From contig OZ251230.1 in the NCBI GenBank assembly GCA_965240325.2, positions 1,178,001 to 1,242,000 of the forward strand: DNA of 64,000 bases, written 5' to 3'. This stretch comes from Rebecca billardiae RCC1528 (Eukaryota > Protista > Haptophyta). Position 1 is the first letter of the stretch; every line of letters starts with the position of its first letter. Under the pieces are notes generated by a model. The model did no database searches, was not told the DNA's origin, and saw only the letters and a list, made by a program, of their open reading frames with translations. Shown here one piece after another: positions 4,648 through 61,425 of the stretch. A program made the position numbers and the translations under genes.

Positions 4648-4676
4648 TGGTATCGGCGCGCTCGAACGCCTACGGC

Positions 4677-29122: not shown

Positions 29123-32100
29123 TCAGGCGGAGGTGAAGAGCGATTTCATGGCGCCGATCACCGCACCGACCGTAGACGCGAGAATGTCGTTGATGATCTC
29201 GGCCATCACCTCGTTGGCGGTGAGCCGGTCGATGAGCCATGGCATCGCGGCGCCGATTGCGATCATGATGGGCTCCTGCCAAGCCGCACGCGCGGGGGGG
29301 GTGCGAGGCGGACGCGCGCGCGGGGTGATGCGTGGCGCGCACGCCTCGAGCGCCCTGCCCCGCCCCGCGCACGCTGGCTCGCGCGCGCATGCGCCCAGCC
29401 GTGCCCAAGGCGCAGCGCACCTCGACAGAAAGTGTCTGAACCTCTGCGACCGTCCACGAGACGAGCAGCTCGCGCGTCGTCGAGTTCCCAAACGTGACCG
29501 AGAAGACGATGGCGATCATCGCCATCGCGGTGAAGATGGCCCACATGCACAGCCACGCGAGCGCGATGCGCACGTACGGGTGCGGCGTGAGCGCGCGCTG
29601 CAGCGTGGCCGCGTGCTTGCGCCAGCCGTGCTTGCGACGCTCGTCGCGCACGGCGGCCTCCTGCGCGCGCGCGCGCGCATGCGCGCGGCGGTCACGGCGC
29701 GGGACCGCACGCTGGCGACGTGAGCGAGTGCCCGCGCGCACGCGGCAGGCGGGCGCGCGATGCGGTGCGCACGGCACGCGCGCGCACCGTCGTCATGTTG
29801 TCATACCACACGATCAGCTCGTTGAACGAGATCTCCGAGTTGCCGTCCTTGTCGAGGGCGAGGGCCAGCCGCTGCACGCGCCGGCGCGACATCTTGAAGC
29901 CGACCTCGTGCAGCAGCGTCTTGAGCTCGTACACGTCCATGTGCCCGGAGTGGTCCGAGTCGAACTTGACAAACTTGGCGCGCAGCAGCCGAACGACCGG
30001 CTCTGAGAGGCTGTGCGGCACCGTCACCTCCATCGACTCGATGTGCTTCGCGGCCGTCGCGGGAGGGCCGCTCTGACTGCCGGCGGAGGGGCCGGCCGCG
30101 AGCGCGGGCGGCTGCGGCGGCGCGCCCGTCGAGGGGGGACCTGCCGCGCTGGGCCCCTCCTCCGCCGGCGGCGGTGGGATCGGCGGCGGCGGCGGCGGCT
30201 TGGTCGGCAGCGGCCTGCCCGCCGCCGCCGCCTCTGGCATCGAGGCCCGAGGCGGCGGCGGAGGCTGCGAGATGGTGGCAGCGCTGCCTGCCTTGGCACT
30301 CGGCGGCGGGCGCGGGGGCATGCGCGAGCGCGGCGGCGCGGCAGTGGTGGCGGGCGCGCCCGTGCGGCTCTTTGTGCGCGGCGGTGGCGGCACCGCGACG
30401 CGCGAGGAGAGAGCGCGGCGCGCGCCCGCGCTGCTCGCAGCGTCCGTGCTGGCCGCCGCGCCGGCGCGCGGCGGCGGCAGCGGCTCCAGCTGCCCGGCCG
30501 CCGCGGCGCCGTCCGCCGCCGGCTCTGCCGGCAGCGGCGGAGAGGAGGACGGGGACTGGGCGATCGATGCCGGCCGTCGGCTCACGCTCAGAGGCGAGCT
30601 CTGCGGCGAGGGCACGACGGCTGCCGGCGGCTGCCGGCGCGGGCGGCCAGCGCGCACGGGCCACATCGGCGACCTGCGGGGTGGCGACGGCTGAGCGGGC
30701 GACGGCGGCGCGCTCGCACCCGCGCGCTCGGCGGCGGAGGGGGACAGCCGCAGGCTCTGCGCCGCGGCGGTCTGCGTCGGCGTGACGCTCGACTCGAACT
30801 TCTTCGGAGCCCCGCTCGAGGACGAGCCGCTCGCCGGGCTCAGCGCCGCCGCCGCCGCGCTGTCCTTGGAGCGCGCCGTGGCCTCGGGCGAGATGGGCGC
30901 GTCGACGGCGCGCTTGGAGGCGCGCGCGGCGGCGAAGATGGTGGCGACGCCGGCGCCGGAGGCCGGCGGCGTGGGCGGCGGCGTGGGCGCGCCCTTCACC
31001 CGGTGCCGCACCATCATCTTGTCCTCCGCCTCGTTCGGGTCGATGATCGCCTTGAACACGCGCTGCGCGAGCGGCGTGTCTCGGCCGTACCCCAGCAGGA
31101 AGATGGTCTTGAAGAGCGCGAGCGCGGGCAACGAGAGGCCCGCGGTGATCGAGGCGAAGATGACCATCTGCACGAGGTTGAACGAGATCGCCGCGCCCGA
31201 CGAGCCGTCGTCCGACGAGGGCGCCGTGTTGTACAGCATGCACTCGATCACGAGGCCGAGCATGCACACGTTCCAGAACGACTGGCACAGCTCGGCGCGC
31301 TTGGCCGTCTCCGGGTCGCCAAACCAGAGGCCGAGCACGGTGTGCTCCGTCTCGAGCGCGTCGACCATCAGCCGGTACAGCCGCGTGAACGAGTGGTCCT
31401 TGGTGCGGTCGCCGCGCTTGAAGAGCATGTTCGCCTGCGCCACCTCCTTCCGCGCCATCTTGCCGCGCATCACCGCCTGGATCGCCAGCGCCGCCTTCTC
31501 CGTCTGCTCGGCGACAGCGTCGTCGAACTTGTCGAGCCGCGCCTCGAGCGCCTGCGCGCGCGCCTCCTGCTTCTTGAGCTTGGCCGCCTCGGCGGCGGCG
31601 CGCTTGGCGCGCTTCGCCTCCGTGTCGGTGTGGTCCTTGTAGCAGAAGAGGCACAGCGAGAGGAAGCAGCCGCCCGCCATGCCGAGCACCAGCCCGAAGA
31701 TGTACGGGTTGTTCTGCACGCGCTCGGCGAGCCCCTCCGCGCTCAGCGCGCTCTTCGCGTCGTCCGCAGAGAAGGTGTTCACCTGGATGGCGGAGGCGTC
31801 CTCGGCGATGTCGTCGGTCGAGGTGGGCACGTCGACGGCGATGCCGCCAAAGTCGGTGAGGTGCGTGCAGCTGCAGTACAGCAGGCTCGGGTCGGCGCCG
31901 TCGGGCGGCGCGATGCGCGTGCACCCGTCCTGGCTCCACTCCGCCAGCGTCTCGTCCCAGTAGAAGCACTGCGCCTCCTCCGCGCACGACGGTCCCGTGT
32001 ACGGCGAGACGCAGTCGCACGCGCCGTCGGCCGCGCACGCGCCGCGCCCCTTCGCCGCGTTGCAGCCCTCGAGCTCGGCGCAGCTCCCCGACGCGCCCAC

Positions 32101-35100
32101 CACGCGCTCCGAGCCCGCGGTGATCGGGATGGCGACCACGATCGGCTCGTCGAGGCTCTGCACCTGCAGCGCGACGCCGTCCGTGCCGAGGAGCGAGACG
32201 GAGAAGACGCCGGTCTGCAGCGCGCCGGTGGAGGAAGAGCCGCCCTGCAGCCGGCGGCGCGCGCGGCGCCGCGCGTCCGCCGCCGAGCCCGCCGACGCGT
32301 TCGTCGTGCCGTTCGGCTCGGGGCAGCCGAGGTCGGCGTAGATGTTGTCGGCGATGATGGACGAGTGCAGCACGACGCCGCCGCCCGTCGCGTTTGCGAG
32401 CGCGGCCGCCGAGATGTCGAGCGCGCCCTGCCCGCCGGGGCCGGCGAGCGTGCCGTTGGCGAGCGCGCCCTTCGTCGCGACGACGGCCGTCACGTTCACC
32501 TTGGCCGTCGACGCCTCCGTCGCCGGCTCGCCGGGCACGCCGCCCGCCGTCATCGTCGACGCGACCGCGGCCGCCGCCTGCTTGGTCGCGGCGTTCACGG
32601 CCGCGAGCGCCGACGCGGTGCAGTTGGTCTCGTTGCCCGCGTCGGCGAGGCGGCGGCGCCGGCTGGCGGACGCGTCGGCGGACTGCAGCACGCAGCTGAT
32701 CGTGCCCACCACGTCGCCCGCGAACGAGTCCGACGAGCCGTCGCTCGACGCGGCGCTCGCGGCGTTGGCGACCGTCGTGATGGCGAGCGTCTGCCCGCTG
32801 TCGTCGAGCGCGCAGCCCGAGCCGCCCGCGATCGACGCGACGACGGAGGCGGTCTGCTGCGTCGAGTCGGAGGTGGAGACGGAGGAGGAGGCGACGCTGC
32901 TCGCGGTGCTCAGCATCAGCGTCGACACCGACGTGCTCGCGTCCGCGCCCGTCGCGTTGGCCTCGTCCAGCCGGCGCCGCCGTCGGCTCAGCTGGCTCGC
33001 GTCGCACGCCAGCGCGTCACCGGTGCCCTTGCCCGCCGCGCCCGAGAGCGATTTGAGCAGCTGCATCGCCGCGGCGCCCGAGCCGGTGCCGGCCGCCGTG
33101 TTGGCCGCGTCGAGCGCCGCGGCCACCGCGTCGCAGTCCAGCGCCGGCGCCTCGTCGACGAGCACGCCCGCCACGGACGCGCGCGCGGACGCGCCGTAGT
33201 AGTCGAAGACCGAGACGGTCACGGTCAGGTTGCCCGCGGGCAGGAACGCGTTGGACGACTTGGCCTTGACGCGCTCGCCGAGCGACTGCGCGGCGTCGGC
33301 GCCGCTCGGCAGGTACGCGTAGCCGTACTCGATCGGCGAGTCCTCCGGGTCGTCCGTCCACCCGTTCGCGCGCAGCTTGAACTTGGTCTCCAGCTCGACG
33401 CCGCCGGCCATCGGCGAGACCGTCAGGTCGCCGCCGTACGGCGGTCGGTTCATCTGCACGCTCACCGACGCGACCGCGGGCTGCGAGCCGCCAAAGACGC
33501 GGAGCTCGAAGACGTAGAGCGCGCCCGCGGTGAGCACGCCCGAGCGGAACGCGAGCGACGGCCCGTCCGCGCCCGTCGTCGTCACGCCCGCCGCGTCCGC
33601 GAGGTCGAGGCCGGCGTCGAGCAGCTCGCCCGCGACCGCCACGCGCGCGCTCCACTCGTAGGAGTAGGCGTCCAGACCCGCCGCCTCGCGCGCGGCCGAG
33701 ACGGCGTCGAGGCTGGTGGAGAGCGAGACGCGCTGCGTGGGCAGCGACCAGGTGGGGTTGTACTTGAGCGCGGTGAGCGGCGCGAACGAGACCACCGGCA
33801 CCGCGCCGTTCACCACCTCGAGCACCACGGCCGCGCTCGCGTCCGCAAGGCCGCCCTTTGAGAGCGTGAGGCTGATCGTGTAGTTGCCCTCCGCGAGCTG
33901 CACCGCCTCGGGCACGGCGAGCACCGGGCCGTCGACGGCGACGCTCGCGTCGAAGGCGGCGGGCGTGCCGTGCGTCGCGTTCAGCCGCCGCGCCACCGAC
34001 CACGCGAACGAGAGCTCCGGGTCGAGCCCGGCGCTGTCGCCGTCGGGCACGTTGGGGTCGTACGAGGCGGACGCGTCAATCTCGAGATCGGCCGTGGTGC
34101 TCACGCGGCGGTCGCCGCCCGAGATGATGGCCTGCAGCGGCTGCGCGACGACGACGAGGCGGACGGACGCGCTCGTCGCCGAGCTCGGGTCCGCGCCCAT
34201 CGCCGCCGAGAGCGCCAGCGTGTACGTGCGCGACGGCGCGAGCGAGAAGGCGGGGATGCGCAGCGACGCGCGCTCGGGCTCGGCGAGCGCGAGCGACGTG
34301 TCGGCGGTCGCGTCGGCGCCCGCCGCGTCCGTGATCGACGTGACCGACCACGCGAAGTCGATCTGCGCGGAGTCGTCGGCGGGCCAGCAGTCGGCGAGCG
34401 CCGCCACGCCCTTGAGCAGCACGCTCGACGACGGCCGCGCGGTCAGCTCGAACGGCCCGTCGATCGAGAGCGAGGGCGTGGCGCCGCCCGCGCGCGTGAC
34501 CGCCCAGCGCTTGAGCGCGGACGTGCGGCCGACAAAGGACGAGACGCGCAGCAGGAAGACAAAGTTCGAGCCCTCGAGCCCGTCGATCGTGAGCACCGAC
34601 GTCGTGGGCGGGTACGCCGTCGTGTCCGCCAGCCGCGCGTTGATCTGCGCCGCGAAGTCGGAGACGCTCGGGTCGACGCGCCACGTGTACGTGATGTCCT
34701 TGATGCCGCCGCCGGTCGAGCCGCTGCCGTCGAGCACGAGCACCTCGCCCGGGCACGACGAGATCTGGGTGGGCCCGTTGAGCGCGGCGACGGGGACGGG
34801 GCACGAGCCGACGCACGGGAAGTCCGCGTCGATCGTCGCGCTCGAGCTCGCGCACACCTCGTCCGGGCAGCTGCCGCCAAACGCCTTGGGCCAGATCGTG
34901 TTCTCGCGCAGCGCCACGCTCGAGCCCGGGCCCATCGCCGTCAGGTAGTTGAGCTCGGCGACCAGCGTGCTGTCGTCGGCCCAGTAGCACGAGGGCTCGG
35001 CGCTGAAGCTGCCGCGGATCGTCGCGACCGTCGCGTCGTCGAGCACGCGCGCGCACGGCCCCGAGCCCACCATCCCGCCGCGGTTGGTCGGCTGGCCGTC

Positions 35101-38100
35101 GAACTGCACGACCAGCGCGGTCGCCTCCGAGTTGAACGCGGCAGATACAATCTCGGGCGCGTGCAGCCCGACAAAGGTGAAGGAGCCGGCGTCGGCCGCG
35201 GCGGCGGGCGCGAACTGGCGGCCGTTGAGCGCGACGCGCACCGCGGCGCCGCCCTCCGCGCCCCAGCTCGCCACCTGCACGATGCGCGTGTCGCTGAACT
35301 CGAGCGGCGCCGCGGCGGTCGTCGGCCCAAACTTGACGCGCAAGAAGGAGGCCGGGTCGGCGCCGTACCCGAAGGCCGCGTCGGCGAGCGCGGCAAAGCC
35401 CGAGCCCACGATGGTGGTGCGCGTGCCGCCGAGGGCGTCGCCCTCGGCCGGGCTCACCTCGAGCACGCTCGGCTCGTCGTAGTACACGAAGGGCCGCCCC
35501 GCGTCGGTGGTGGACGCGAGGCTGCCGCCGCCGAGCGAGACGTCGAGCGTGCGGTTGCCCGACGCGTCGACCGCGGGCATCGCGCACAGCGCGCGGTCGG
35601 TGCCGTCAGCCGCGGGCGCGAGGAGCGTCGCCTTGACGGCGCACTCGCCCGCGCGGTCGAGCACGCAGCACAGCAGCTTGGTCGCGTCGCTCGAGTCGTC
35701 GCCGTACTCCTTGAACCCCGTGCCGAACACGGTGACGAGCGTGCCGCCCGCCACCGGCCCGCCGGGCGGCACGAGCCGCGTCACGCCCACGTTCGAGGCG
35801 TCGTACAGCTCGAAGCCGATCTCGTCGAAGAAGAGCGGGGCGAGGTGCACGCCGCCGTTGAGCGAGAGCGAGACGGTGTACTCGCCCGCGCCCGCGCCCA
35901 CCGGCGTGTCGCACTCCGCCGTCGCCGCGTCGACCACGGTGGCGGGCGCCTGGAAGACCGCGCCTCCGCCGGCCGCGCCGACAAAGAAGCAGAGCGGCGC
36001 GCCCGCGCCGAGGTCGACAAAGCCCGAGCCGCTCAGCGTGATCGCGGTGGAGCCCGCGAGCGCGCGCCGGCGCGCGCCGTCGCTGCCGTCGACCGGCGCG
36101 CCCTGCGGCTCGCCCGACTCGACGAGCGCGGTGTACAGCGTGAACTGCGCGCCGGAGGTGCTGAAGGCCTGGCCGTTGAGCGACACCTCGACCACGATCA
36201 AGCCCGCGCTCACGGTGGGCGACACGTACGGCGCGGCGCAGAGCAGCTCGGACGTGCCCGCGTCGGGCAGCGTCGCCGCCACCTCGACGCGGCCAAAGGC
36301 GAAGTTGGTCCCGATGAACGCGCAGCGCAGGCCGCCGTAGTCGGCGTAGTTGGTGCCGGAGACCGCGACCTCCACGTCGGCCGTGCCCTGCGGCGCGCCC
36401 GGCGGCGCGAGCGCGCCCACCGTCACGCCCGCCATGTCGAAGTAGGCGAACTCGTTGGTGATGGCGATGGGCTCGCGCGGCTCGCCGTCCTCGTCGTCCT
36501 CGTCCGCGACGAGCGAGAGCGTCACCTCGCCCGCGGCGCTGAAGGCGGGCGCGGTGCACGCGATCTCGGTGGGCGTGATCGAGCTGACGCGCACGCGCGT
36601 GCCGTCAAACACGCAGTAGATGATGTCCGCCTTGCTCTGCGCGCCCAGGTCGAACTGCGAGCCGAAGATGGTCACGTTGGTCGCGATGCCGCTGTTGGCG
36701 AGCGTCGCGCCCGTCGGCGAGAGCGACTCGAAGTTGGCGAGCGCGAACGGGTCGCCGGGCACGGTGACCGAGAGCGTGACGCCGGCGAAGCGGCGCCAAG
36801 GCAGGCCGCCGGACGCGCCGCCGAAGCGGAAACACAGCCGGTGGCCTGTCGCGACCGCGCCAAACGTGAACGAGGCGGTGCGGTCGGCGGCGACGACGGC
36901 CGCGGCGCCGCTCACGCTCGCCGCCTCGTCGCACGCCGTTGCGGCCGCCGGCACAAAGTACGCCTCGTCGCCCGCGCCGACGCCCACGCCCTGGAAGGCG
37001 AAGGTGCGCTCGAGCGTGACGACCGCGAGCACGACGAACGGCCCGCTCACCTCGAGCACGTCCAGCTGCAGGCTGGCGTACAGCGCGAACGGCTCGGCGC
37101 GGAAGCGGTAGCAGAGCATGTACCCGAGGCCGCCAAACTTGCGCAGGAAGGTGTAGCTCGCGGAGAGCCCGCTCAGCGTCCGCAGCCCGCCCCACTGCAC
37201 GAGCGGCGGCTCGTCCGCGCACGAGGCCGTGCCCGCGGGCACCCAGTACGCGGCGTCGCCGTCTGCCACGCCAAACCCCGAGAAGGTGACGGCGTGCGGC
37301 TCGCCCACGACGGCGCGGCTGCCGCCGCCGAGCGCGTCGAGCTGGTACACGTCGAGCGTCACGCCCGCGTAGTGCGCCCACGGCTCGGCCGCGAAGCGGT
37401 GGCACAGCGAGAGGCCGGCCTTGGGCGCGAGCGGCGTGAAGGTGCCCACGCCGAGGCCGGTCGTGTTGAACACGCCGCCGTACTCGTCGAGCGCGCCGCC
37501 GCCCGCCGGCGGGCACGCTGACGCGTCCTCGACCCAGTACGCCTGGTCGCCCGCCGCGAGGCCGACGCCCTCGAACGGCAGCGCCTCCTCCACGCCCGCC
37601 ACCGCGACGGTGAACGCCGGGCCCTGCACCTCGGCCACGACCAGCGTGATCGCCGCGCCGTACGAGCGCACGGGCTCGTCCGCGTGCGTGTAACACAGGC
37701 GCAGGTCCGGGTGGGCGACGTCAAAGGTGAAGGAAGCGGCGAGGGCGGCGTCGAGGGTCTGCGCGCCGCCGTACGCAGCGCGTGGCGCGCCGTCCACCGG
37801 GTCGGCGCAGTCGACCGCCGTGCCGTTGTACGGCAGCCAGTACGCGCCGTCGCCCGGCACGAGGCCGTAGCCATCGAAGCGCACCGCCTCCGGCACGCCG
37901 ACGACCGCGAGGCTCGCGGTGGGCGCGCTCACGACGAGCGCGTCGAGCGTGAGCGACGGGTACCGCTTGAACGGCTCGCCCGCGAACGCAAAGCAAAGCG
38001 CCAGGCCCAGCCCGCCCGCGGGCAGCGTGAAGCTCGCGCTCAGGCCGGCGCCGAGCGTGCGCGCCGCACCGAACGCGACGCCCGCGCAGTCGGCCGCGGC

Positions 38101-53100: not shown

Positions 53101-56100
53101 CGCGCGCATCGTGCCCACCTCCGTCGGCACCGTGCCGTTGAGCCTGTTCTGGTTCCAGACAAACCAGTCGAGAGCGGTGAGCACGCCGACCTCTGTGGGC
53201 ACGGAGCCCGTGAACGAATTGGCCTCAAAGTTGAAACGATTGTCAGCAGCGGTCAGCTGCCCAATCTCCGTCGGGATCGTGCCGGTGATGGAGTTGGTGC
53301 CGGCGTTGAAGTTGCTCAGCTGCATCAGGTTGCCAAACTCGGTGGGCAGCGAGCCCGTCAGCCCGGCCTGGTAGGTGCGCACTTCAGTGAGGCTGGTCAT
53401 GAGGCCGATCTGTGTCGGCAGCGGCGCGCCGAACGCGTTGTTGTTTGCCAAGAATGACTGCAAGCTCGTCAGACCGCCAATCTCTGTGGGCCACTGGCCA
53501 GTGAGGCTGTTCGCGTCCACAATCAGCTCGGTGAGCGCGCTGAAGAGGCCGAGCTCGGTCGGCAGCGTGCCCGTGAGACCGCGGCTGCTGAGGTCGAGCG
53601 AGGTGCACGTGCTCGGGTCGGCCTCGCACGCCTGGAACTCGGGCTGCGCGCGCACCGTCGGCGCGGGCGGTGGGCTCGGTGGCGGGCCGGGTGGCGGCGG
53701 CGTGGGCGACGCGCACGCGGTCAGCGGGTCCGGGTCGATCACGCCTGTGCCGTTCAGCCCGGTCGCCGCCGTGTCGCCGCACATCCCCGTCGACGTCACG
53801 ACAAAGGAAGTGAGCGCGCCGAGCGCGCCGATCTCGGAGGGCAGCGTGCCCAGCACGTCCGGGTTGGTGCCGATGTTGAAAAGCGCGAGCGCTGCGAGCT
53901 GGCCGAGTGCCGTTGGCAGCGTGCCGCTCAGCGAGTTCGTGTCTAGCTCCAGACGCGATATCGCTGTGAGCAGCCCAATCTCCGACGGCAGCGTGCCGCG
54001 TAGCGAGTTGGATCCGAGCTGGATGTTGCTCGTGCGCGTGAGACTGCCCAGCGTCGTCGGCAGCGTGCCGTTCAGACTGTTGAGGAAGAGTTGGATGTGA
54101 TCGAGCGCGTTCAGCGCGCCGAGCTCCGTCGGCAGCGGGCCCGTGAACGCGTTGATCGCTGCAGCAAGCTTGGTCAGGCTGGCCAGCCGGCCCAGCTCCG
54201 TCGGCAGCGTGGCCGCCAGCGCGTTGTTGCCAAGGTCCATGTTCGTGAGCGCTGCCAGGTCGCCGAACTCGGTGGGCAGCCCGCCGGTCAGTGGCCCAGC
54301 ATAGATGATCATGCTTGCGAGGCTCGCCAGCTGGCCCAGCTCCCTCGGCAGTGACGCCTGAAACGAGTTCGAGTAGAGCTCGAGATTGACCATGCTGGCT
54401 GCGAGGCCGAGCTCGGTCGGGATTGGCCCCGTCAGCGAGTTGGCTTGCAGCTGTAGGGTTGTGAGGGCGGTCATGTTGCCGAGCTCGGTGGGCATCTGGC
54501 CCGTGATCGAGTTGGTGTGCAAATGGAGCCAACTGAGCGCGCGCATCGTGCCCACCTCCGTCGGCACCGTGCCGTTGAGCCTGTTCCCGCTCCAGCCAAA
54601 TCGGTCGAGGGCCGTGAGCCCGCCGACCTCTGTGGGCACGGAGCCCGTGAACGAATTGACCTCGAAGACAAGAAGCACGTCCGCAGCGGTCAGCTGCCCA
54701 ATCTCCGTCGGGATCGTGCCCGTGAACGAGTTGCCGCCGGCCGAGAACTCACCCAACTGCGTCATGTTGCCAAACTCGGTGGGCAGCGAGCCCGTCAGCC
54801 CGGCCTGAAAGGTGCGCACTTCGGTGAGGCTGGTCATGAGGCCGATCTCTGTCGGCAGCGGCGCGCCGATCACGTAGTTGTTGTACAGCCAGAAGGACTG
54901 CAAGCTCGTCAGACCGCCGATCTCTGTCGGCAGCGGCGCGTCGAACGCGTTGTTGTTTAACAAGAGGGACTGCAAGCTCGTCAGACCGCCAATCTCTGTG
55001 GGCCACTGGCCCGTGAGGCCGTTCAGGTGGGCGTGGATAACAGTGAGCGCGCTGAAGAGGCCGAGCTCGGTCGGCAGCGTGCCCGTGAGAGCGCGGTTGG
55101 CCACGCCGAGAGCCGTGCACGTGCTCGGGTCGGCCTCGCACGCCTGGAACTCGGGCTGCGCGCGCACCGTCGGCGCGGGCGGCGGGCTCGGCGGCGGCGA
55201 CGGCGGCGGGCTCGGCGGCGGGGCGGGCGGGCTCGGCGGGTAGTAGCCCGACAGCTTGAGCACCCACGCCGCGCCTTGGGCATCCTTGGGCGCGCCCACG
55301 ATGATCGACGGATTGCCGCCCCCGTCCAGGTCGCCGAGCAGGGCCACCTTCCTGCCGAACTCGTCGTCGTGCGCGAGCGGCCCAGTGAAGCCGCCCGCGT
55401 CCGCGCTGATCTCGTCCACGTGCTTGGCGCTGCCGTCAGCGTTCAGGTAGACCACAAACGCGGCGCCGGTCTTGCCGGCGGTGCGGACAACGCCCGTCGC
55501 GCCGACCAGAGCATCAGGCACGCCGTCGCCGTCCAGGTCGCCCGCGCCGCCCACCGCGACTCCAAACACCCACGACGCGCTCGCCGTGAGCGGCATGGCG
55601 CTCCCGTCAGGCACGAGCTTCCGCTCCGCTTTCACCGTGCCATTCGCGTGCAGGAAGAGCACGTACAAGGCGCCTGCGTTCGTGGCGGCGGTGTCGTCGC
55701 CGGGCGCGCCGACCAGCACGTCGACGACGCCGTCACCGTCAACGTCGCCCAGTGTCGCCACGCCGCCCCCAAAGAAGTCATCGGCAGCCAAGCTCGCGCT
55801 CAGCCCGCCCGTGCCCGAGGCGATCTTCTGCTCCGCCTTCACCGTGCCATCCGCGTTGAGCAGGAGCACGTACACCGCGCCGCCGCCGCTCACGCCCGTG
55901 TCGTCACTCGTCGCGCCCGCGATCGCGTCCGGCACGCCGTCACCGTCCAGATCGCCGAGCCCCGACAGGCTCTCCCCGAACAAGTCGCCCGCGTCGAGCG
56001 TCGACGTGAATCCGCCCACGCCCTGCGCGAGCTTCTGGTACTCGCGCACGGTGCCGTTGCGATGCATGAACAGCACGAAGAGCGCGCCCTTGTTCGCGCT

Positions 56101-59100
56101 GTCCAGCGAGTTCACCATCAGCTCGGTCACGTTGTCGCCGTCGAGGTCACCGAGCCGGTCCGCGCCAAAGCCGAACTGATCCAGGTTGCTCAGCGCGTTG
56201 GTGAAGCCGCCGATCCCGTTCGCGATCTTCTGCTGTGCCCGCACAGTCCCGTCCGAGTTGAGGAAGAGCACGTACGCCGCGCCCTGCCTGTCGAACACGT
56301 CGTGCACCGCGCCGGACAGCGCGTCCGGGATGCCGTCGCCATCCAGGTCGCCGATGCCCGCGACCCAGCCCCACCACGCGACGCTGGGCACGACCACGCC
56401 ATTCGTGCCGTTCGCGAGCTTCACCTCGGACAGGACCACGCTGGGCGGCGGGGAGGGCGGGCTCGGTGGCGGCGCCGGCGGCGGGCTCGGCGGCGGCGCG
56501 GGCGGCGGGCTCGGCGGCGGCGTGGGCGACGCGCACAGCGGCAGCGGGTCAGGCTGCACCACGCCCGTCCCGTTCCACGCGGCCGAGAAGCCACACACGC
56601 CAGTGGCCTCCACGTTGAAGCTCGTGAGCGCGGTCAGCAGGTCAATCTCGGTCGGCAGCGCGCCGGTGACGGGCGTGTTGTTCGTGGCCAAGAACTCCAC
56701 GAGCCTGGTCAGCAGGCCGAGCTCGCTGGGCAGCCTGCCGCTCAGCGAGTTGGACTGCAGCCCCACCGCCGTCAGCGCGGTCAGGAGTCCGAGCTGGCTC
56801 GGCACGGGGCCGCTGAGCGAATTGGCGGCGACGTCGAGGTGAGCGAGCGAAGTGAGCAGGCCAAGCACGGTGGGGAGCGTGCCCGTGAGCGAGAGCGCCG
56901 CGAGATCGAGGGTGTGCAGCGCGGTGAGCGCGCCGAGCGAGAAGTTGAGCGCGCCGCCGAGGCTCATCGTGTTGACCGAGAGCTTGGTGAGCGCCGTCGT
57001 TCCGCCGAGCGCCACGGGCAACCCGCCGGTGAACTGCGCGCTCGCGACGACCACCTCTGCGAGCGACGGCTTGGAGGCGAAGAGCTCGGCCGGCAAAGCG
57101 CCGCTCAGCGAGGGCGAGCTGAGCGTGAGCGTGGAGAGCCCCACCGCTCGGCCGATCTCTGTCGGCACCGTCCCCGCGAGCGAGGTCCCCGCCACGAACA
57201 GCCTCCCCAGGCTGCTGAGCTCACCAAGCTCAGTCGGCAGCGTGCCACTGAGCGTGCTCCCGCCGTCGCCAAAGGCCAGGTCTTCCAGCGCCGGCATCCA
57301 CAGAGCGAGCTCTGACGGCACCGTGCCGCTCAGCGGGTTGGCCGTCAGGAAGAGCGTCGTGAGTGAGCCGAGCGCGCCAAACGTGGCGTTGTCAAACGTC
57401 GGGCCGGTGAGCAGGTTCGAGTTCGCCGAGAGCTTCGTCAGGTTGACCAGCCGGCCGAGCTCCGTCGGCAGTGGGCCGGTGATTGAGTTGGACGCCACGA
57501 TCAGCTCGGTGAGCGCGCTGAAGAGGCCGAGCTCGGTCGGCAGCGTGCCCGTGAGCGCACGGCTGCTGAGGCTGAGCGAGGTGCACGTGCTCGGGTCGGC
57601 CTCGCACGCCTGGAACTCGGGCTGCGCGCGCACCGTCGGCGCGGGCGGCGGGCTCGGCGGCGGACCGGGTGGCGGCGGCGTGGGCGACGCGCACGCGGTC
57701 AGCGGGTCCGGGTCGATCACGCCAGTGCCGTTCAGCCCCGTCTCCGCCGTGTCGCCGCACACCCCCGTCGACGTCACGACAAAGGAAGTGAGCGCGCCAA
57801 GCGCGCCGATCTCGGAGGGCAGCGTGCCCAGCACGTCCTGGTTCGTGCCGATGTTGAAGAGCACGAGCGCGGCGAGCTGGCCGAGCGCCGTCGGCAGCGT
57901 GCCGCTCAGCGAGTTCGTGTCTAGCTCCAGACGCGTCATCGCTGTGAGCAGCCCAATCTCCGATGGCAGCATGCCGCGCAGCGAGTTGTATCCGAGCTGG
58001 ATGTCAAGCATGCGCGTGAGACTGCCCAGCGTCGTCGGCAGCGTGCCGTTCAGACTGTTGAGGAAGAGCCGGAACTGATCGAGCGCGTTCAGTGCGCCGA
58101 GCTCCGTCGGCAAGCCGCCAGAGAGCGCGTTCTGGTAGAGCTCGAGATTGACCATGCTGGCTGCGAGGCCGAGCTCGGTCGGGATCGGCCCCGTCAGCGA
58201 GTTGATTTGCAGCTGAAGGTGCGTGAGGGCGGTCATGTTGCCGAGCTCGGTGGGCATCTGGCCCGTGATCGAGTTGGTGTGCAAATGGAGCCAACTGAGC
58301 GCGCGCATCGTGCCCACCTCCGTCGGCACCGTGCCGTTGAGCCTGTTCTGGTTCCAGCCAAACCGGTCGAGGGCCGTGAGCCCGCCGACCTCTGTGGGCA
58401 CTGAGCCCGTGAACGAATTGGCGTCGAAGACGAGAAGCACGTCAGCAGCGGTCAGCTGCCCAACCTCCGTCGGGATCGTGCCCGTGAACGAGTTGCCGCC
58501 GGCCGAGAACTCACCCAACTGCGTCATGTTGCCAAACTCGGTGGGCAGCGAGCCCGTCAGCCCGGCCTGAAAGGTGCGCACTTCGGTGAGGCTGGTCATG
58601 AGGCCGATCTCTGTCGGCAGCGGCGCGCCGATCACATAGTTGTTGTACAGCCAGAAGGACTGCAAGCTCGTCAGACCGCCGATCTCTGTCGGCAGCGGCG
58701 CGTCGAACGCGTTGTTGTTTAACAAGAGGGACTGCAAGCTCGTCAGACCGCCAATCTCTGTGGGCCACTGGCCCGTGAGGCCGTTCAGGTGGGCGTGGAT
58801 AACAGTGAGCGCGCTGAAGAGGCCGAGCTCGGTCGGCAGCGTGCCCGTGAGAGCGCGGTTGGCCACGCCGAGAGCCGTGCACGTGCTCGGGTCGGCCTCG
58901 CACGCCTGGAACTCGGGCTGCGCGCGCACCGTCGGCGCGGGCGGCGGGCTCGGCGGCGGCGACGGCGGCGCGCTCGGCGGCGGGCTCGGCGGCGGGCTCG
59001 GCGGCGGGCTCGGCGGCGGGCTTGGCGGCGGGCTCGGCGGCGGGCTCGGCGGCGGGCTCGGCGGCGGTGGGGAGGGCGGTGGCGACGGCGGCAGCAACGG

Positions 59101-61425
59101 TGGTGGGCTCGGCGGCGGGGCGGGTGGCGGCGGGCTGGGCGGTGGGCTGGGCGGCGGGCTGGGCGGCGGGCTGGGCGGCGGGCCTGGCGGCGGGCTCGGC
59201 GGCGGGCTCGGCGGCGGGCTTGGTGGCTGGCTGGGCGGGGGGCTCGGAGGCGGCCTGGGTGGCGGGCTCGGCGGCGGGCTCGGCGGCGGCAAGGGCGGTG
59301 GTGATGGTGGCGGCACCGGCGGTGGGTTCGGTGGTGGGTTCGGCGGCGGCGGGCTCGGCGGCGGGGATGGCGGAGGCAATGGTGGCGGGCTTGGCGGCGG
59401 GCTCGGCGGCGGCGGGCTCGGCGGCGGGCTCGGCGGTGGGCTCGGCGGTGGGCTTGGCGGCGGTGTCGGCGGGGGAGTAGGAGGCGGGGTTGGTGGGCTG
59501 GCGGGCGGCGGGGATGGGGGTGGACTCGGAGGTAGCCGAGGTGGCGGGCTCGGCGGCGGGCTCGGCGGCGGGCTCGGCGGCGGGCTCGGCGGCGGGCTTG
59601 GCGGCGGGCTCGGCGGCGGGCTCGGCGGCGGGCTCGGCGGCGGTGGGGAGGGCGGTGGCGACGGCGGCAGCAACGGTGGTGGGCTCGGCGGCGGGGCGGG
59701 TGGCGGCGGGCTGGGCGGTGGGCTGGGCGGCGGGCTGGGCGGCGGGCTGGGCGGCGGGCCTGGCGGCGGGCTCGGCGGCGGGCTCGGCGGCGGGCTTGGT
59801 GGCTGGCTGGGCGGGGGGCTTGGAGGCGGCCTGGGTGGCGGGCTCGGCGGCGGGCTCGGCGGCGGCAAGGGCGGTGGTGATGGTGGCGGCACCGGCGGTG
59901 GGTTCGGTGGTGGGTTCGGCGGCGGCGGGCTCGGCGGCGGGGATGGCGGAGGCAATGGTGGCGGGCTTGGCGGCGGGCTCGGCGGCGGCGGGCTCGGCGG
60001 CGGGCTCGGCGGTGGGCTCGGCGGTGGGCTTGGCGGCGGTGTCGGCGGGGGCGTAGGAGGCGGGGTTGGTGGGCTGGCGGGCGGCGGGGATGGGGGCGGA
60101 CTCGGAGGTAGCCGAGGTGGCGGGCTCGGCGGCGGGCTCGGCGGCGGGAGTGGCGGGCTGCTGGGCGCAAAAGAGGCTGCCGATGGGTCGATCGTGAAGA
60201 GGTGAACGACGCGGCCCGGGTTGGCCTCCAACGCCACACCCGTGACCAGCACGTCCAGCCGTGTGCTGTTGAGGCTGCTGTTCGTCTGCTCGCGCACATC
60301 GATGTGGTAGCCAAACCGCGCGAAATTGACCAGGGCCGTCGTCGCTTCCTCAAGACCGCCGCCCGTGGCGCCAATGACGTCGTAGCCAGCCACTGTGCCG
60401 TTGGCGCCCATGTAGCACACGTACACGATGCCGTCATCCGTGCCGCCGTCGTCGGCCAAGAACGCGCCAATCAGCAGGTCGGGCTGACCGTCCGCGTTGA
60501 GGTCATGTGCCTTGCCGTTCGTGTTGCCAGCATGGCCGAAGTTGTCCGACAAGGCGATCGGCAGCTCCGTGCCGCCCGGGTCGACGCGCACCTCGCTCTT
60601 CACCGTGCCGTCCGCATTGAGCAGCAGTAGGAAGGCAGTGCCACCGGACACGGCGTAGAAGCCGTCTAAGGCCGCCGAGACGAGCGCGTCGGGCACGCCA
60701 TCGCCATCATAGTCGCCGATGCCACCGCACGAGCCACCAAAGTTGCCGGCCGTGTCGGAAAGCACCGACGTGTACTCGACCTCGGCCTTGACGGTGCCGT
60801 CAGTGTTGAGCATGAGGACGAAGATCGTCGTGGTCAACGTGCCCACCACGATGTCGGGCACGCCGTCAGCGTCCACGTCGCCGAGCACGCCGATGCCGTG
60901 CCCAAAGTTCATCGATATGGTGCTGAACGTGGCCTTCCCGTTCGTGTTGGAGGCGATCTTGGTGTTGGAGACGACGGCGCCGGCGGTGCTCAGAAAGACG
61001 ACGTGCACGCTGTCGTCCAGGTCGTCCCCGACGATGAGCTCGGGCAAGCCATCGCCGTCGATGTCGACGCCGCGGGGCTCCTGCCCAAATTGGCCGACGA
61101 CACTCGGTGCCGTGGTCCACGTGCCTCCGGTCGGCCCGGCACCGAGCGATGCCTGACTCATGACGGCGCGCTGCTCGTTGAGGAACGTGATGTCGCACAG
61201 CCTCGACGTCCGCTGGCAGATCACGATCTCGTCCACGCCGTTGCCGTCCAGATCACCCAAGAAGGACGCGGCATTCCCATCGCCCTGCGGGAACGTAAAC
61301 GTGGTGCCGGAGCTGACCAAGTTGAGCGACATGACGGCGCGCGGCCCGAGTAGGAGAAGCGCACATGAGAGCGCAAACGCCATGGTCAACGGCGTCGCGC
61401 GCCGCGCTGCCGGCACGCGCTGCAT
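29123..61425 (-). CDS. Giant polycystin-1 (PKD1/REJ)-like GPS adhesion receptor, ~10,676 aa; exons 61425-29788, 29660-29421, 29275-29123
   Basis: Order of domains: signal peptide (MAFALSCALLLLGPRAVMS), FG-GAP propellers, LRRs, (SPPP)n, IPT x5, REJ (NRPPYGGDLTVSP..ETKF..WTDDPED), GPS (CFYWD..WSQDGC..CSCTHLTDFG), five TM helices, IQ, EF-hand pair. Two phase-0 GT-AG introns (29787-29661, 29420-29276) join PKD1-like TM4/TM5 exons. An alternative ATG lies at 61383. Confidence 0.85.
36765..41640 (-). repeat. 17 tandem ~95-aa Cys-containing beta-rich protein repeats (unrecognised family)
   Basis: The consensus AVVGVxExVxFxGVGxxxGDxAyWV..C..yGG..atFtF..LxLCYxFxxePFxxY was counted 17 times. Confidence 0.85.
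42290..51110 (-). repeat. Coding Ser-Pro3/Pro4 extensin-like (HRGP) array, ~2,900 aa; 63-bp unit, 363-bp higher-order repeat
   Basis: The peptide unit is SPPPP(SPPP)4. A marker CTCGGGGGCGG recurs at 46649, 47012, 47375, 47738, 48101 and 48464. Confidence 0.95.
58980..60140 (-). repeat. Near-exact 576-bp (192-aa) tandem duplication in the N-proximal SP-rich linker
   Basis: Markers GCAGCAACGG at 59091/59667 and GGTAGCCGAG at 59531/60107 are each 576 bp apart. Confidence 0.9.

What the first reader, a model, noticed from the sequence alone, without database searches (positions are those of the whole stretch)
29123..61425. A ~10,700-aa channel-less polycystin-1-like receptor combining integrin-type propellers, plant-type LRRs and an extensin stalk
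Seen in sequence, N to C: signal peptide; FG-GAP propeller (~60190-61300); SP linker; 2 LRR cassettes; second FG-GAP propeller (~55245-56440); 3 LRR cassettes; ~2,900-aa (SPPP)n; SEA-like domain plus GCMD..ASNY motif; 17 novel repeats; 5 IPT/TIG; REJ; GAIN with an inserted EGF-like module; intact GPS site H-L|T (31855-31863); 5 TMs. Established: REJ-GAIN/GPS-TM is the PKD1 family core, FG-GAP propellers form integrin-alpha heads, and LTGxLPTELG LRRs and SP3/4 arrays are typical of plant receptor kinases and wall HRGPs. Inference: a long-reach, autoproteolysed cell-surface sensor (adhesion, mating, prey or pathogen recognition) built from animal-like and plant-like modules. I do not recognise this architecture as described.
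Basis: partly seen in the sequence, partly recalled or inferred. Interest (0 to 1): 0.9.

Follow-up and report, generated by a model that had tools for sequence, protein, structure and literature searches.

The report
Giant head-on-stalk REJ/GAIN surface receptor
One three-exon gene of a very GC-rich alga, probably a pavlovophyte haptophyte, encodes a 10,676-residue surface protein with integrin-like and plant-receptor-like binding heads on a roughly 0.9-micrometre proline rod, anchored by a self-cleaving polycystin-1-type base; it belongs to a protein family that no paper I could search describes.

Summary
The minus strand carries one uninterrupted 10,591-codon frame. With two short 3' exons, supported by homologues, it gives a 10,676-aa protein (61425 to 29123).

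- **Confirmed by tools:** two FG-GAP propellers (best solved matches are integrin alpha), five plant-type LRR cassettes (GSO1/FLS2, E to 1e-113), a 2,935-aa Ser-Pro rod, and 17 copies of a ~95-aa repeat. Also five TIG units (three above the Pfam cut-off), REJ (E 1.5e-47), a GAIN fold with an intact C-x-C-x-HL|T-x-F site, an IQ motif and a canonical EF-hand pair.
- **Not confirmed:** the SEA identity of a conserved domain, and exactly five membrane helices (four clear, one or two weak).
- **Absent:** PLAT and a channel domain. The membrane module shows no detectable similarity to solved polycystin chains.
- **The repeat is not unique.** It folds as an Ig-like sandwich and occurs in 324 cluster representatives, oomycetes included.
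- **The base is a family.** It is 35-42% identical to proteins from Pavlovales and from unnamed assemblies, where stalks and a different head appear.

The scan had already noted about ten similar genes on other DNA of this genome.

Verdict: a new variant of the REJ/GAIN receptor kind, most likely an adhesion or tension sensor. No RNA data were available, so the single transcript is untested.

The parts
29788..61425 (-). Exon 1: 10,546 codons from the first ATG to the donor site after ...WYDNMTT.
   Evidence: no stop in 10,591 codons, and every Pfam domain lies in this frame.
29661..29787 (-). Intron 1 (GT..AG, 127 nt).
   Evidence: One search gives the sequence. Removing it joins the EF-hand to ...EAAVRDERRKHGWRKH, which matches CCMP2436 P0002.
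29421..29660 (-). Exon 2 (80 aa), which carries TM4 at 29496-29567.
   Evidence: the combined exon 2+3 peptide (label CT45) matches P0002 at E 1e-33. Hydropathy is 2.41.
29276..29420 (-). Intron 2 (GT..AG, 145 nt).
   Evidence: The junction SVE|EPIMI equals the contiguous FEEPIMI in P0002. The CCMP2436 locus has an intron at the same place.
29123..29275 (-). Exon 3 (50 aa plus stop), with two weak hydrophobic segments at 29231-29272 and 29147-29197.
   Evidence: hydropathy 1.39 and 1.66.
61327..61425 (-). Signal-peptide-like N-terminus (…MAFALSCALLLLGPRAVMS).
   Evidence: Read from the translation; hydrophobic peak. No dedicated predictor was run.
60178..61326 (-). FG-GAP propeller 1, with five DxDxDG-type loops.
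   Evidence: (FG-GAP_3 at 4e-14, FG-GAP at 5e-12).
58933..60177 (-). Ser-Pro linker of about 415 aa, an internal tandem duplication (96.8% identity over 652 nt).
56431..58932 (-). LRR cassettes 1 (type A) and 2 (type B), each with Cys-containing caps.
   Evidence: LRR_14 at 7.7e-30; GSO1 at 1.5e-113, FLS2 at 3e-104.
55228..56430 (-). FG-GAP propeller 2.
   Evidence: FG-GAP at 2.4e-21; integrin alpha-6, -4, -L and -V, E to 4e-9; 34-36% identical to propeller 1.
51103..55227 (-). LRR cassettes 3, 4 (type A) and 5 (type B).
   Evidence: LRR_14 at 5.9e-53. One search gives DNA identities between cassettes of 74-96%.
42298..51102 (-). Ser-Pro3-4 stalk of 2,935 aa. The DNA periods are 12, 63 and 363 nt, and a central zone is 97% identical at lag 363.
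41893..42297 (-). Conserved domain of about 95 aa (SEA-like by pattern only) plus the Cys motif GCMDTGASNY...C.
   Evidence: 31% identical to the P0013 N-terminus, E 3e-10. No hit in Pfam, the Atlas or the solved chains.
41653..41892 (-). Second Pro-rich linker.
   Evidence: The same linker precedes the repeats in P0013, P0012 and P0009.
36769..41652 (-). 17 tandem Ig-like repeats of about 95 aa, with two invariant Cys each.
   Evidence: (pLDDT 89.9).
35158..36720 (-). Five IPT/TIG units.
   Evidence: TIG at 5.9e-25; unit by unit: 1e-8, 0.074, 0.011, 7e-6, 2e-5.
33151..35157 (-). REJ module. The Pfam match covers ORF residues about 9033-9431.
   Evidence: REJ at 1.5e-47, 162.7 bits.
31693..33150 (-). 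GAIN domain: helical subdomain A, beta subdomain B with an EGF-like insert (31933-32100), the GPS motif and the post-cleavage stalk.
   Evidence: GPS Pfam at 6e-7.
31855..31863 (-). The His-Leu|Thr cleavage triplet within C-x-C-x-H-L-T-x-F.
   Evidence: The motif is present in all nine relatives printed there. The upstream C-x2-W...W-x4-C is also present.
31639..31707 (-). TM1.
   Evidence: hydropathy 2.24; conserved in alignment A3.
31444..31500 (-). IQ motif in the first cytosolic loop, where PKD1 has PLAT.
   Evidence: IQ at 21.5 bits, above the 20.3 cut-off; IQ-type matches; conserved A-x-x-I-Q-R-H-x-R-G.
31093..31296 (-). TM2 and TM3, preceded by the conserved EHTVLGLWFGD...RAEL motif.
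29788..29985 (-). EF-hand pair with two canonical 12-residue loops (DSDHSGHMDVYE and DKDGNSEISFNE).
   Evidence: EF-hand_7 at 7e-10; centrin and calmodulin, E to 2e-9.

Best explanation
This is one nuclear gene for a giant type-I-start, multi-pass surface receptor built on a 'head, stalk, base' plan.

**Shown by tools.**
- The heads are seven binding modules: two FG-GAP propellers with Ca-loop motifs and five plant-type LRR solenoids.
- The stalk is a 2,935-residue Ser-Pro3-4 array.
- The base is a conserved domain, 17 Ig-like repeats, five TIG units, REJ and a GAIN domain with an intact HL|T site.
- The membrane part has four clear helices and one or two weak ones. An IQ motif sits in the first cytosolic loop and a canonical EF-hand pair in the second.
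- There is no PLAT and no channel domain.
- The base is a conserved family, 35-42% identical across about 3,100 aa.

**Inferred mechanism.**
1. The signal peptide takes the protein into the ER.
2. The Ser-Pro array is hydroxylated and glycosylated into a stiff polyproline-II rod, about 0.9 micrometre long if fully extended.
3. The GAIN domain cuts itself at HL|T, so a ~9,850-aa outer fragment stays bound non-covalently to a ~825-aa membrane fragment that starts TDFGGIAV.
4. The heads bind a ligand on another cell, particle or surface.
5. Pull or shear on the long tether strains or removes the outer fragment and exposes the conserved stalk (T-D-F-G/A-G...V-P-T-S...V-N-T-F-S).
6. That changes the helical bundle, whose IQ and EF-hand loops couple it to calmodulin and Ca2+. 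Any ion flux must come from a separate, unidentified partner channel.

The most likely biological role is cell-to-cell or cell-to-particle adhesion with signalling: mating, or recognition of prey, bacteria or pathogens.
For: - **Single frame and gene model:**
- **Domains:** Pfam and solved-chain matches.
- **GAIN fold:** (4dlq at E 1.7e-8; the top 11 hits are all GAIN domains).
- **Cleavage motif:** the full GPS consensus is present in the window and in all nine relatives printed.
- **Post-cleavage stalk and membrane module:** conserved in alignment A3.
- **Topology is self-consistent.** IQ and EF-hands both fall on the cytosolic side, and an N-x-T sequon lies in the predicted outer loop after TM4.
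- **Family of bases:** P0012 is 42.5% identical over 3,143 aa; P0013, P0009, P0021 and P0015 are also related.
- **A stalk sits upstream of the base in another organism:** locus L002 has at least 576 aa of in-frame Ser-Pro sequence.
- **CCMP2436 shows a different head** (Ice_binding), then a Ser-Pro run interrupted by an assembly gap, then TIG-REJ-GAIN-TM-EF.
- **No sign of a chimeric join inside the stalk:** codon use is stable and repeat identity decays smoothly from a homogenised centre. Head cassettes are 74-96% identical, not 100%.
- **Established background:** GAIN is necessary and sufficient for autoproteolysis (PMC3321182). PKD1-family members with 1, 2 or 6 membrane helices and no channel exist (PMC1934368).
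Against: - There is no RNA or protein evidence. No RNA run holds the locus, and the one run laid on it gave only short, low-depth contigs.
- Autoproteolysis, glycosylation, localisation and ligand are all untested.
- The membrane module has no detectable similarity to any solved chain, polycystins included, so its transducing role is assumed.
- GC3 differs between heads (0.87-0.91) and base (0.95-0.98). That is unexplained, and it would also fit a mis-join between two stalk-bearing genes.
- The copy number in the 97%-identical central zone of the stalk may be mis-assembled.
- The absence of heads in database relatives may only reflect truncated contigs.
Confidence: 0.6

Rival explanations
1. 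It is a structural coat or glycocalyx protein, an algal analogue of membrane mucins or wall hydroxyproline-rich glycoproteins. The rod and repeats would build a brush or anchor scales and fibrils. GAIN (and perhaps SEA) cleavage would act as a mechanical fuse that lets the outer part shed, with no signalling role.
For: - 27% of the protein is a Ser-Pro array.
- The base carries 22 Ig-like or TIG spacer domains.
- A conserved domain with a SEA-like pattern sits just under the rod.
- No known signalling enzyme or channel domain is present.
- The genome is said to hold many such genes (unchecked notes).
Against: - Seven specific binding modules sit at the tip.
- The multi-pass membrane module is conserved, with an IQ motif and canonical EF-hands in its cytosolic loops. 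A plain anchor would not need these.
- The post-cleavage stalk is conserved.
Confidence: 0.2
2. The locus is not one gene as assembled. Either the assembler joined a head gene to a base gene through their similar Ser-Pro arrays, or the cell makes separate head and base transcripts from internal start and stop signals.
For: - The stalk is 8.8 kb of repeats with a zone about 1.5 kb long that is 97% identical at lag 363.
- GC3 differs between the two halves.
- Other stalk-bearing genes are said to exist in the genome.
- No RNA data exist.
- The public CCMP2436 assembly breaks exactly in such a stalk.
Against: - There is no stop in 31.7 kb.
- The head half has a signal peptide but no anchor, and the base half has no signal peptide of its own. 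Neither is complete alone.
- Outside the central zone the stalk DNA is only about 70% self-identical, so long reads can place it.
- Codon use and repeat type do not jump anywhere in the array.
- Relatives also carry a stalk directly upstream of the base.
Confidence: 0.12
3. It is a gamete-recognition protein, the pavlovophyte counterpart of the Chlamydomonas sexual agglutinins and of the sea-urchin and brown-algal REJ proteins. On this reading it is expressed only in a sexual stage. This is a special case of the best explanation rather than a contradiction of it.
For: - REJ/GPS proteins act in, or are candidates for, gamete recognition in sea urchin (PMC1934368) and Ectocarpus (PMC4700764).
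- Chlamydomonas agglutinins are cane-shaped molecules with the head directed outward from the flagellar membrane (PMC2113723).
- A distant relative, P0010, combines REJ/GPS with a GEX2-type Ig domain and filamin repeats.
Against: - There are no expression data.
- A large family with many different heads fits a broad recognition repertoire better than one mating pair.
- I checked nothing here about sexual stages in this alga.
Confidence: 0.15

Closest known systems
Polycystin-1 / REJ family (human PKD1, PKDREJ; sea-urchin SpREJ1-10)
   Same: - A REJ domain followed by GAIN/GPS directly before the first membrane helix.
- A large modular ectodomain with Ig-like repeats above REJ.
- Channel-less members with 1, 2 or 6 helices exist in sea urchin (PMC1934368).
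   Different: - No PLAT/LH2 after TM1; an IQ-bearing coiled coil sits there instead.
- No PKD_channel half and no PF00801 PKD repeats.
- An EF-hand pair lies in a cytosolic loop.
- The membrane module is not detectably similar to solved polycystin chains.
- The heads and the micrometre-scale stalk are unknown in this family.
Adhesion GPCRs (latrophilin, BAI, CELSR, GPR126)
   Same: - The GAIN fold with the HL|T site.
- A modular adhesive ectodomain.
- A conserved stalk after the cut, in the position of the tethered agonist.
   Different: - No 7TM_2 domain.
- Four to six helices, interrupted by long cytosolic loops.
- REJ lies upstream of GAIN.
Hypothetical proteins of Pavlovales: T492DRAFT_959500 (Pavlovales sp. 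CCMP2436) and KFE25_002410 (Diacronema lutheri), plus unnamed proteins P0012, P0013 and P0009
   Same: These are true relatives. They share TIG-REJ-GAIN/GPS-TM1-IQ-TM2,3-EF-TM4,5 at 31-49% identity. The exon 2/3 intron position is conserved in CCMP2436.
   Different: - None shows FG-GAP or LRR heads.
- CCMP2436 appears to carry an Ice_binding head.
- The D. lutheri paralogue has no head or stalk.
- The public gene models are truncated and unnamed.
Ectocarpus Esi0130_0068 (male-gamete REJ/GPS protein)
   Same: An algal REJ + GPS multi-pass membrane protein, proposed as a recognition receptor (PMC4700764).
   Different: - It has 1,427 aa and no heads or stalk.
- The authors report a polycystin channel signature.
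- It comes from a stramenopile, not a haptophyte.
- I did not compare the sequences here.
Chlamydomonas sexual agglutinins and plant LRR-extensins (LRX)
   Same: - A binding head on a hydroxyproline-rich Ser-Pro shaft that projects from the cell surface (PMC2113723).
- LRX chains appear among the solved matches of the LRR cassette.
   Different: - Those proteins have no REJ/GAIN base and no multi-pass membrane module.
- Here the array has essentially no Tyr, so extensin-type Tyr cross-link motifs are absent.
Integrin alpha subunits and plant LRR receptor kinases
   Same: - The propeller sequence is closest to integrin alpha chains.
- The LRR cassettes are closest to the GSO1, FLS2, MIK2 and PEPR1 ectodomains.
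   Different: - No thigh or calf domains and no beta-subunit partner is known.
- No kinase domain.
- Both domain types are only heads of a larger chain here.

Membership tests
PKD1 / REJ family | REJ domain | tested here: met
   Pfam PF02010 at E 1.5e-47, 162.7 bits against a cut-off of 25.
PKD1 / REJ family | GPS motif inside a GAIN domain, directly before TM1 | tested here: met
   Pfam GPS at E 6e-7. C-x-C-x-HLT-x-F with the upstream Cys and Trp residues. GAIN fold. TM1 lies about 52 residues after the cut.
PKD1 / REJ family | PLAT/LH2 domain in the first cytosolic loop | tested here: not met
   No PF01477 hit at E up to 1 on the loop. The loop is a charged helix of about 115 aa with an IQ motif. 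According to PMC1934368, half of the sea-urchin REJ proteins also lack PLAT.
PKD1 / REJ family | 11 membrane helices, the last six channel-like (PKD_channel) | tested here: not met
   No PF08016 or ion-channel hit. Only four clear and one or two weak hydrophobic segments.
PKD1 / REJ family | Sequence similarity of the membrane module to polycystin TM1-5 | tested here: inconclusive
   Profiles A3 and A5 find no solved chain at E up to 10. I recall a motif resemblance, but only from memory.
Adhesion GPCR (class B2) | GAIN domain | tested here: met
   The 11 best Foldseek hits are all adhesion-GPCR GAIN domains, E 1.7e-8 to 6e-4.
Adhesion GPCR (class B2) | Secretin-type seven-helix domain | tested here: not met
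   No 7tm_2 hit. The helix count and spacing do not fit.
Integrin alpha | FG-GAP seven-blade propeller with Ca-binding loops | tested here: met
   The number of blades was not modelled.
Integrin alpha | Thigh and calf domains, a single helix and a GFFKR tail | tested here: not met
   Nothing of the kind appears in the translation or in Pfam.
Plant LRR receptor kinase | 24-residue plant-type LRR ectodomain with Cys caps | tested here: met
   (GSO1 at 1.5e-113).
Plant LRR receptor kinase | Cytosolic protein kinase domain | tested here: not met
   No Pkinase hit.
Extensin / hydroxyproline-rich glycoprotein | Ser-Pro3-5 repeats | tested here: met
   2,935 aa, 2,209 Pro and 622 Ser.
Extensin / hydroxyproline-rich glycoprotein | Tyr cross-link motifs; Pro hydroxylation and O-glycosylation | tested here: not met
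   Tyr is not among the eight commonest residues of the array. Hydroxylation and glycosylation cannot be tested with these tools.
SEA domain | SEA fold and the G|SVVV cleavage site | tested here: inconclusive
   No Pfam, Atlas or solved-chain hit. The domain is conserved with P0013. The window reads TSVVV where P0013 reads GSIVV.
Undescribed pavlovophyte head-stalk-REJ/GAIN-5TM-EF family | Colinear base: Ig-like repeats, TIG, REJ, GAIN/GPS, TM1, IQ, TM2-3, EF pair, TM4-5 | tested here: met
   38-43% identity to P0012, P0013 and P0009 along the shared base. Conserved membrane module. Stalk upstream in L002 and L004.

The most novel reading that the evidence does not exclude
Pavlovophyte haptophytes carry a diversified repertoire of micrometre-long 'receptors on a pole'. 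Interchangeable heads (FG-GAP, LRR, ice-binding-like, and others according to scan notes) are shuffled onto a constant stalk and base. The base is a new kind of signal transducer: GAIN self-cleavage exposes a tethered stalk peptide that activates a lineage-specific bundle of about five helices, read out through its own IQ and EF-hand loops. On this reading it is a third output type for GAIN receptors, beside seven-helix GPCRs and 11-helix polycystins, serving recognition of mates, prey, bacteria or viruses at a distance from the cell.
Probability: 0.25. Interest if true: 0.85.

Novelty: new variant of a known kind. Interest (0 to 1): 0.62.

Why it matters
- **It widens the known range of GAIN/REJ receptors.** These are studied almost only in animals, in polycystic kidney disease, adhesion GPCRs and sperm-egg recognition. 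Here the same autoproteolytic core sits in a haptophyte on a different membrane module with built-in Ca2+/calmodulin elements. That offers a simple outgroup for asking what the REJ-GAIN unit does by itself.
- **It combines modules usually treated as animal or plant hallmarks.** Integrin-type propellers, plant-type LRRs and an extensin-type rod occur in one chain. This bears on how old these modules are and how freely they move between proteins.
- **Public annotation hides such genes.** In Pavlovales sp. CCMP2436 the relative is split by an assembly gap in its stalk and truncated. Surface-receptor repertoires of GC-rich algae are therefore probably under-counted.
- **Possible ecology.** A receptor reaching about 0.9 micrometre from a small flagellate could shape encounters with bacteria, viruses, prey or mates.

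Tried and rejected
- **Giant relatives.** A search among proteins of 5,500-17,500 aa using the TIG-REJ-GPS part found none. The gap at 2,475-7,875 aa was then covered and gave only P0009 and P0010.
- **Expression evidence.** The run index gave one low-share run of unknown kind. Laying it gave nine short contigs, one of them identical over 151 nt at the GPS site. It showed no joints and said nothing about splicing.
- **SEA identity.** Pfam, the Atlas feature search and a two-sequence profile against the solved chains all came back blank.
- **Link of the membrane module to polycystins.** A phmmer search, two profiles and an Atlas search found nothing. Only IQ-type and EF-hand matches appeared.
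- **Partner channel nearby.** The neighbours are a Copia element, a NARG2-like ORF, an ATP-grasp ORF and a TCP-1 chaperonin; none is a channel.
- **Long plus-strand ORFs opposite the gene** (for example 42422-52924, 3,500 aa). I rejected these as mirror frames of a GC3-rich gene, because all family hits lie on the minus strand.
- **Metagenome scan with the membrane module.** Only six weak loci came back.
- **Literature.** Five full-text searches on REJ, GPS, polycystin, haptophytes and Diacronema found no description of the family. Most 'polycystin' hits were the radiolarian group Polycystina.

Full report
**1. Is the thing there?**

Yes. The minus strand has one frame open from 61467 to 29692, 10,591 codons, with its first ATG at 61425. 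The window is 65-83% G+C. At that composition a stop is expected about every 73 codons, so a 31.7-kb frame is not chance. The long ORFs on the plus strand opposite it (for example 42422-52924) have no family support, and I read them as mirror frames of a gene with GC3 of 0.9 or more.

That requires two introns. The sequence shows GT..AG introns at 29787-29661 and 29420-29276. Splicing them gives ...NELIVWYDNMTT|EAAVRDERRKHGWRKH...SVE|EPIMIAIGAAMPWL...SLFTSA*. The product aligns without a break to the C-terminus of Pavlovales sp. CCMP2436 protein T492DRAFT_959500 (P0002), which reads ...TGWRKHWARAKRA...TFEEPIMIAMSILLPWL (E 1e-33). A tblastn search of the CCMP2436 locus shows an intron at the same exon 2/3 position. 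The product is 10,676 aa.

**2. Domain by domain (residues in ORF numbering)**

- *N-terminus.* It is hydrophobic and signal-peptide-like.
- *FG-GAP propellers.* Residues 48-430 and 1680-2080 are FG-GAP regions (Pfam E 4e-14 and 2e-21). They carry five and four strict DxDxDG-type loops and are 34-36% identical to each other. Every one of the 60 listed solved-chain matches of the second propeller is an integrin alpha subunit, with E down to 4e-9.
- *LRR cassettes.* There are five, each with the cap APTVRAQPEFQACEADPSTCT and a C-terminal Cys cap, arranged 2 + 3 around the second propeller. Pfam LRR_14 scores 8e-30 and 6e-53. Cassette 1 matches plant receptor-kinase ectodomains: GSO1 at 1.5e-113, FLS2 at 3e-104, then MIK2, PEPR1, TDR and BRI1. 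At the DNA level the cassettes fall into two types, A (cassettes 1, 3, 4) and B (2, 5), with 74-96% identity. They are diverged duplicates, not assembly copies.
- *Stalk.* Residues 3456-6390 are a Ser-Pro3-4 array of 2,935 aa with 2,209 Pro and 622 Ser. The DNA periods are 12, 63 and 363 nt. At 0.31 nm per residue that is about 910 nm if fully extended as polyproline II. The extended conformation is an assumption.
- *Conserved domain under the stalk.* About 95 aa, followed by the motif GCMDTGASNY...C. It has no Pfam, Atlas or solved-chain hit but is 31% identical (E 3e-10) to the N-terminus of P0013. 'SEA-like' therefore remains a guess from its strand-helix pattern.
- *The 17 repeats.* They are real: about 95 aa each, two invariant Cys, 44% mean column identity. 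AlphaFold with the 17 copies as alignment gives a seven-strand sandwich at pLDDT 89.9 and pTM 0.83. The nearest solved folds are generic Ig-like or E-set domains: the CNNM4 ectodomain at Z 7.5, plexin and EBF IPT at Z about 7, and Siglec V-set by Foldseek at E 9e-4. The nearest Atlas clusters are haptophyte and euglenozoan hypotheticals.
- *How widespread the repeat is.* A profile of the repeats finds 324 cluster representatives at E up to 1e-3 among 1.84 billion. They include a 7,348-aa protein with 48 matched stretches and Plasmopara halstedii XP_024575440.1. The repeat is missing from Pfam, but it is a widespread protist domain.
- *TIG units.* Five follow the repeats. Three pass the Pfam cut-off and two score E 0.011 and 0.074 over most of the profile.
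- *REJ.* It is unambiguous at E 1.5e-47.
- *GAIN.* Residues 9440-9925 were modelled with eight relatives as alignment, giving pLDDT 67.9 and pTM 0.69. The model shows eight helices followed by a beta subdomain. The 11 Foldseek hits at E up to 1e-3 are all GAIN domains: latrophilin-1 at 1.7e-8, latrophilin-3 (ADGRL3), CELSR1, GPR110, GPR126, BAI3, BAI2, CD97 and GPR56.
- *Cleavage site.* The GPS consensus is complete: C-x2-W, W-x4-C and C-x-C-x-H-L-T-x-F, with H-L-T at 31863-31855 (Pfam GPS at 6e-7).
- *EGF-like insert.* It lies just upstream of the GPS and is weak in the window (E 3e-4, below the cut-off). It passes in relatives P0007 and P0008 and is absent in P0013, P0009 and P0021, so it is a variable insert.

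**3. Membrane part**

Hydropathy gives four clear segments and two weak ones:
- TM1: 2.24
- TM2: about 1.35
- TM3: 2.01
- TM4, in exon 2: 2.41
- Two weak C-terminal segments: 1.39 and 1.66

'Five TMs' is therefore plausible but not settled.

The first cytosolic loop is a charged helix of about 115 aa with an IQ motif (21.5 bits against a 20.3 cut-off; IQ-type matches). No PLAT is found at E up to 1. The loop between TM3 and TM4 is about 460 aa of low-complexity sequence ending in an EF-hand pair. That pair scores E 7e-10 in Pfam and matches centrin and calmodulin to 2e-9, and both of its 12-residue loops are canonical.

With the N-terminus outside, IQ and EF-hands both fall in the cytosol, and an NST sequon falls in the outer loop after TM4, so the topology is self-consistent. 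No channel domain is found. The other ORFs tested in the window are a Copia element, a NARG2-like ORF, an ATP-grasp ORF and a TCP-1 chaperonin; three further ORFs had no Pfam match.

Profiles of the membrane module (A3 with six sequences, A5 with ten) find no solved chain at E up to 10 apart from IQ-like stretches. I recalled a resemblance between the EHTVLGLWFGD...RAEL motif and the segment after PLAT in polycystin-1. That is memory only and was not confirmed.

**4. Relatives**

- No protein of 5,500-17,500 aa in the 5.8-billion set matches the TIG-REJ-GPS part.
- Smaller proteins do match. P0012 (3,179 aa) is 42.5% identical over 3,143 aa, P0013 41%, P0009 38-40%, P0021 39% and P0015 35%. 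P0001 also matches.
- Two named proteins match: T492DRAFT_959500 of Pavlovales sp. CCMP2436, and KFE25_002410 of Diacronema lutheri.
- All share the colinear base: Ig-like repeats, TIG, REJ, GAIN/GPS, TM1, an IQ-like helix, TM2-3, the EF pair and TM4-5.
- The best named hits point to a pavlovophyte haptophyte as the source, but at 31-49% identity they are paralogues or come from other genera.
- None of the retrieved proteins has FG-GAP, LRR or a long Pro array.

The DNA around them shows why the Pro arrays are missing:
- *L002 (carrying P0013).* The frame continues upstream through at least 576 aa of Ser-Pro sequence to the contig end.
- *L003 (carrying P0012).* The contig starts in the Pro linker.
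- *CCMP2436.* The annotated model is truncated. TIG and a full REJ (49% identity, E 2.5e-167) lie upstream of its start. Before them comes an in-frame Ser-Pro run that abuts an 876-N assembly gap. On the far side of the gap, a separately called gene with an Ice_binding domain ends in ...TLPSPPPPS.
- *D. lutheri.* The paralogue is a short form: signal peptide, REJ, GAIN, helices and EF-hands, with no head or stalk.

The head-stalk-base plan is therefore a family trait with variable heads. Short-read assemblies and annotation break these genes at the stalk.

Notes of this scan on other pieces of the same genome describe about ten further genes of the plan, with RCC1, LRR, FG-GAP or kringle heads. 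I could not check them. They agree with what the public loci show.

**5. One gene or an artefact?**

For one gene:
- There is no stop in 31.7 kb.
- The head half has a signal peptide but no anchor, and the base half has no signal peptide.
- Ser-Pro linkers occur in both halves.
- Relatives have the stalk directly above the base.
- Inside the stalk, codon use (CCG above CCA above CCC; AGC for Ser) is stable. Repeat identity falls smoothly from a 97% centre (about residues 4250-4750) to degenerate edges, as expected of a natural array. Outside that centre the DNA is only about 70% self-identical at the short period.

Against:
- GC3 is 0.87-0.91 in the heads and 0.95-0.98 in the base.
- No reads were available. 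The only run found held short, low-depth contigs.

I put a mis-join or separate transcripts at about 0.12.

**6. How it most likely works**

Shown: the parts list above. Established elsewhere: GAIN is necessary and sufficient for autoproteolysis and keeps the two fragments together (PMC3321182). PKD1-family proteins are cleaved at the GPS, regulate partner channels and include channel-less members (PMC1934368).

Inferred here:
1. The rod is modified into a stiff shaft.
2. The chain is cut at HL|T into a ~9,850-aa outer fragment and a ~825-aa membrane fragment that begins TDFGGIAV.
3. The seven heads bind ligand multivalently, the propellers probably with Ca2+.
4. Force on the tether strains or removes the outer fragment and exposes the conserved post-cleavage stalk (T-D-F-G/A-G..V-P-T-S...V-N-T-F-S).
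5. The helical bundle passes this to the cytosol through its IQ and EF-hand loops.

The ligand and the partner are unknown. A purely structural coat role (0.2) and a gamete-specific role (0.15, a special case) are the main alternatives. The second draws on REJ proteins of sea urchin and Ectocarpus (PMC1934368, PMC4700764) and on the cane-shaped Chlamydomonas agglutinins with outward heads (PMC2113723).

**7. Comparison and novelty**

It works like a GAIN/REJ receptor. As to membership, it meets two PKD1-family criteria (REJ, and GPS/GAIN before TM1). It fails two others (PLAT, and the 11-helix channel half). Similarity of the membrane module is undetected. It is not an adhesion GPCR (no seven-helix domain), not an integrin and not an LRR kinase.

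It is a clear member of an unnamed pavlovophyte family. Five full-text searches found no description of such proteins.

I rate it a new variant of a known kind, with interest 0.62. The combination and scale are striking, and the base may be a new output module for GAIN receptors. Function, however, rests on inference, and the gene is one of many similar ones in this genome.

Noticed in passing
L004 (Pavlovales sp. CCMP2436, GCA_026770615.1 MU631356.1) 4292-16366: The public model T492DRAFT_959500 is truncated. TIG and a full REJ lie upstream of its start. An in-frame Ser-Pro run abuts an 876-N gap, and the gene called before the gap carries an Ice_binding domain and ends in ...TLPSPPPPS. This is probably one head-stalk-base gene split into two models.
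   Followed up: partly
window 29692-61467, minus strand: GC3 differs within the one frame: heads 0.87-0.91, stalk 0.72, base 0.95-0.98. I have no explanation. It might reflect a different conversion or shuffling history of heads and bases.
   Followed up: partly
window about 32965-32985, 32650-32665 and 32245-32270, minus strand (ORF residues ~9494, ~9601, ~9733): Three Arg4-5-Leu motifs (SRRRRRL, SRRRRL, RRRARRRL) lie in or beside the low-confidence loops of the GAIN model. An RR is partly conserved in relatives. They may be dibasic processing sites.
   Followed up: no
P0010 (7,559 aa, Logan assemblies): Another giant protist REJ/GPS protein has a different ectodomain: filamin repeats and a GEX2-type N-terminal Ig domain, the kind found in gamete-attachment proteins.
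   Followed up: partly
P0011 (7,348 aa) and P0176 (Plasmopara halstedii XP_024575440.1): The ~95-aa Ig-like repeat of this gene occurs as 48 matched stretches in one unnamed protein. It also occurs in an oomycete protein annotated only as 'Concanavalin A-like lectin/glucanase'. This is a widespread protist repeat with no Pfam model.
   Followed up: partly
window 4518-10649, plus strand: A Copia-type retrotransposon ORF of 2,043 aa (RVT_2 at E 1e-57, retroviral SH3-like and Pol beta-barrel domains).
   Followed up: partly
window 22151-24025 (minus), 15796-17325 (plus), 11474-15592 (minus): The neighbouring ORFs carry TCP-1/cpn60, ATP-grasp and NARG2_C domains. This is an ordinary nuclear context with no channel gene.
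   Followed up: partly
window 58940-60167, minus strand: The first Ser-Pro linker is itself a recent tandem duplication: 652 nt at 96.8% identity, so about 210 aa are repeated.
   Followed up: partly
window 42422-52924, plus strand: A 3,500-aa ORF lies opposite the stalk, and several ORFs of 1,000-1,300 aa lie opposite the base. They have no family support, and I read them as mirror frames of a GC3-rich gene.
   Followed up: partly
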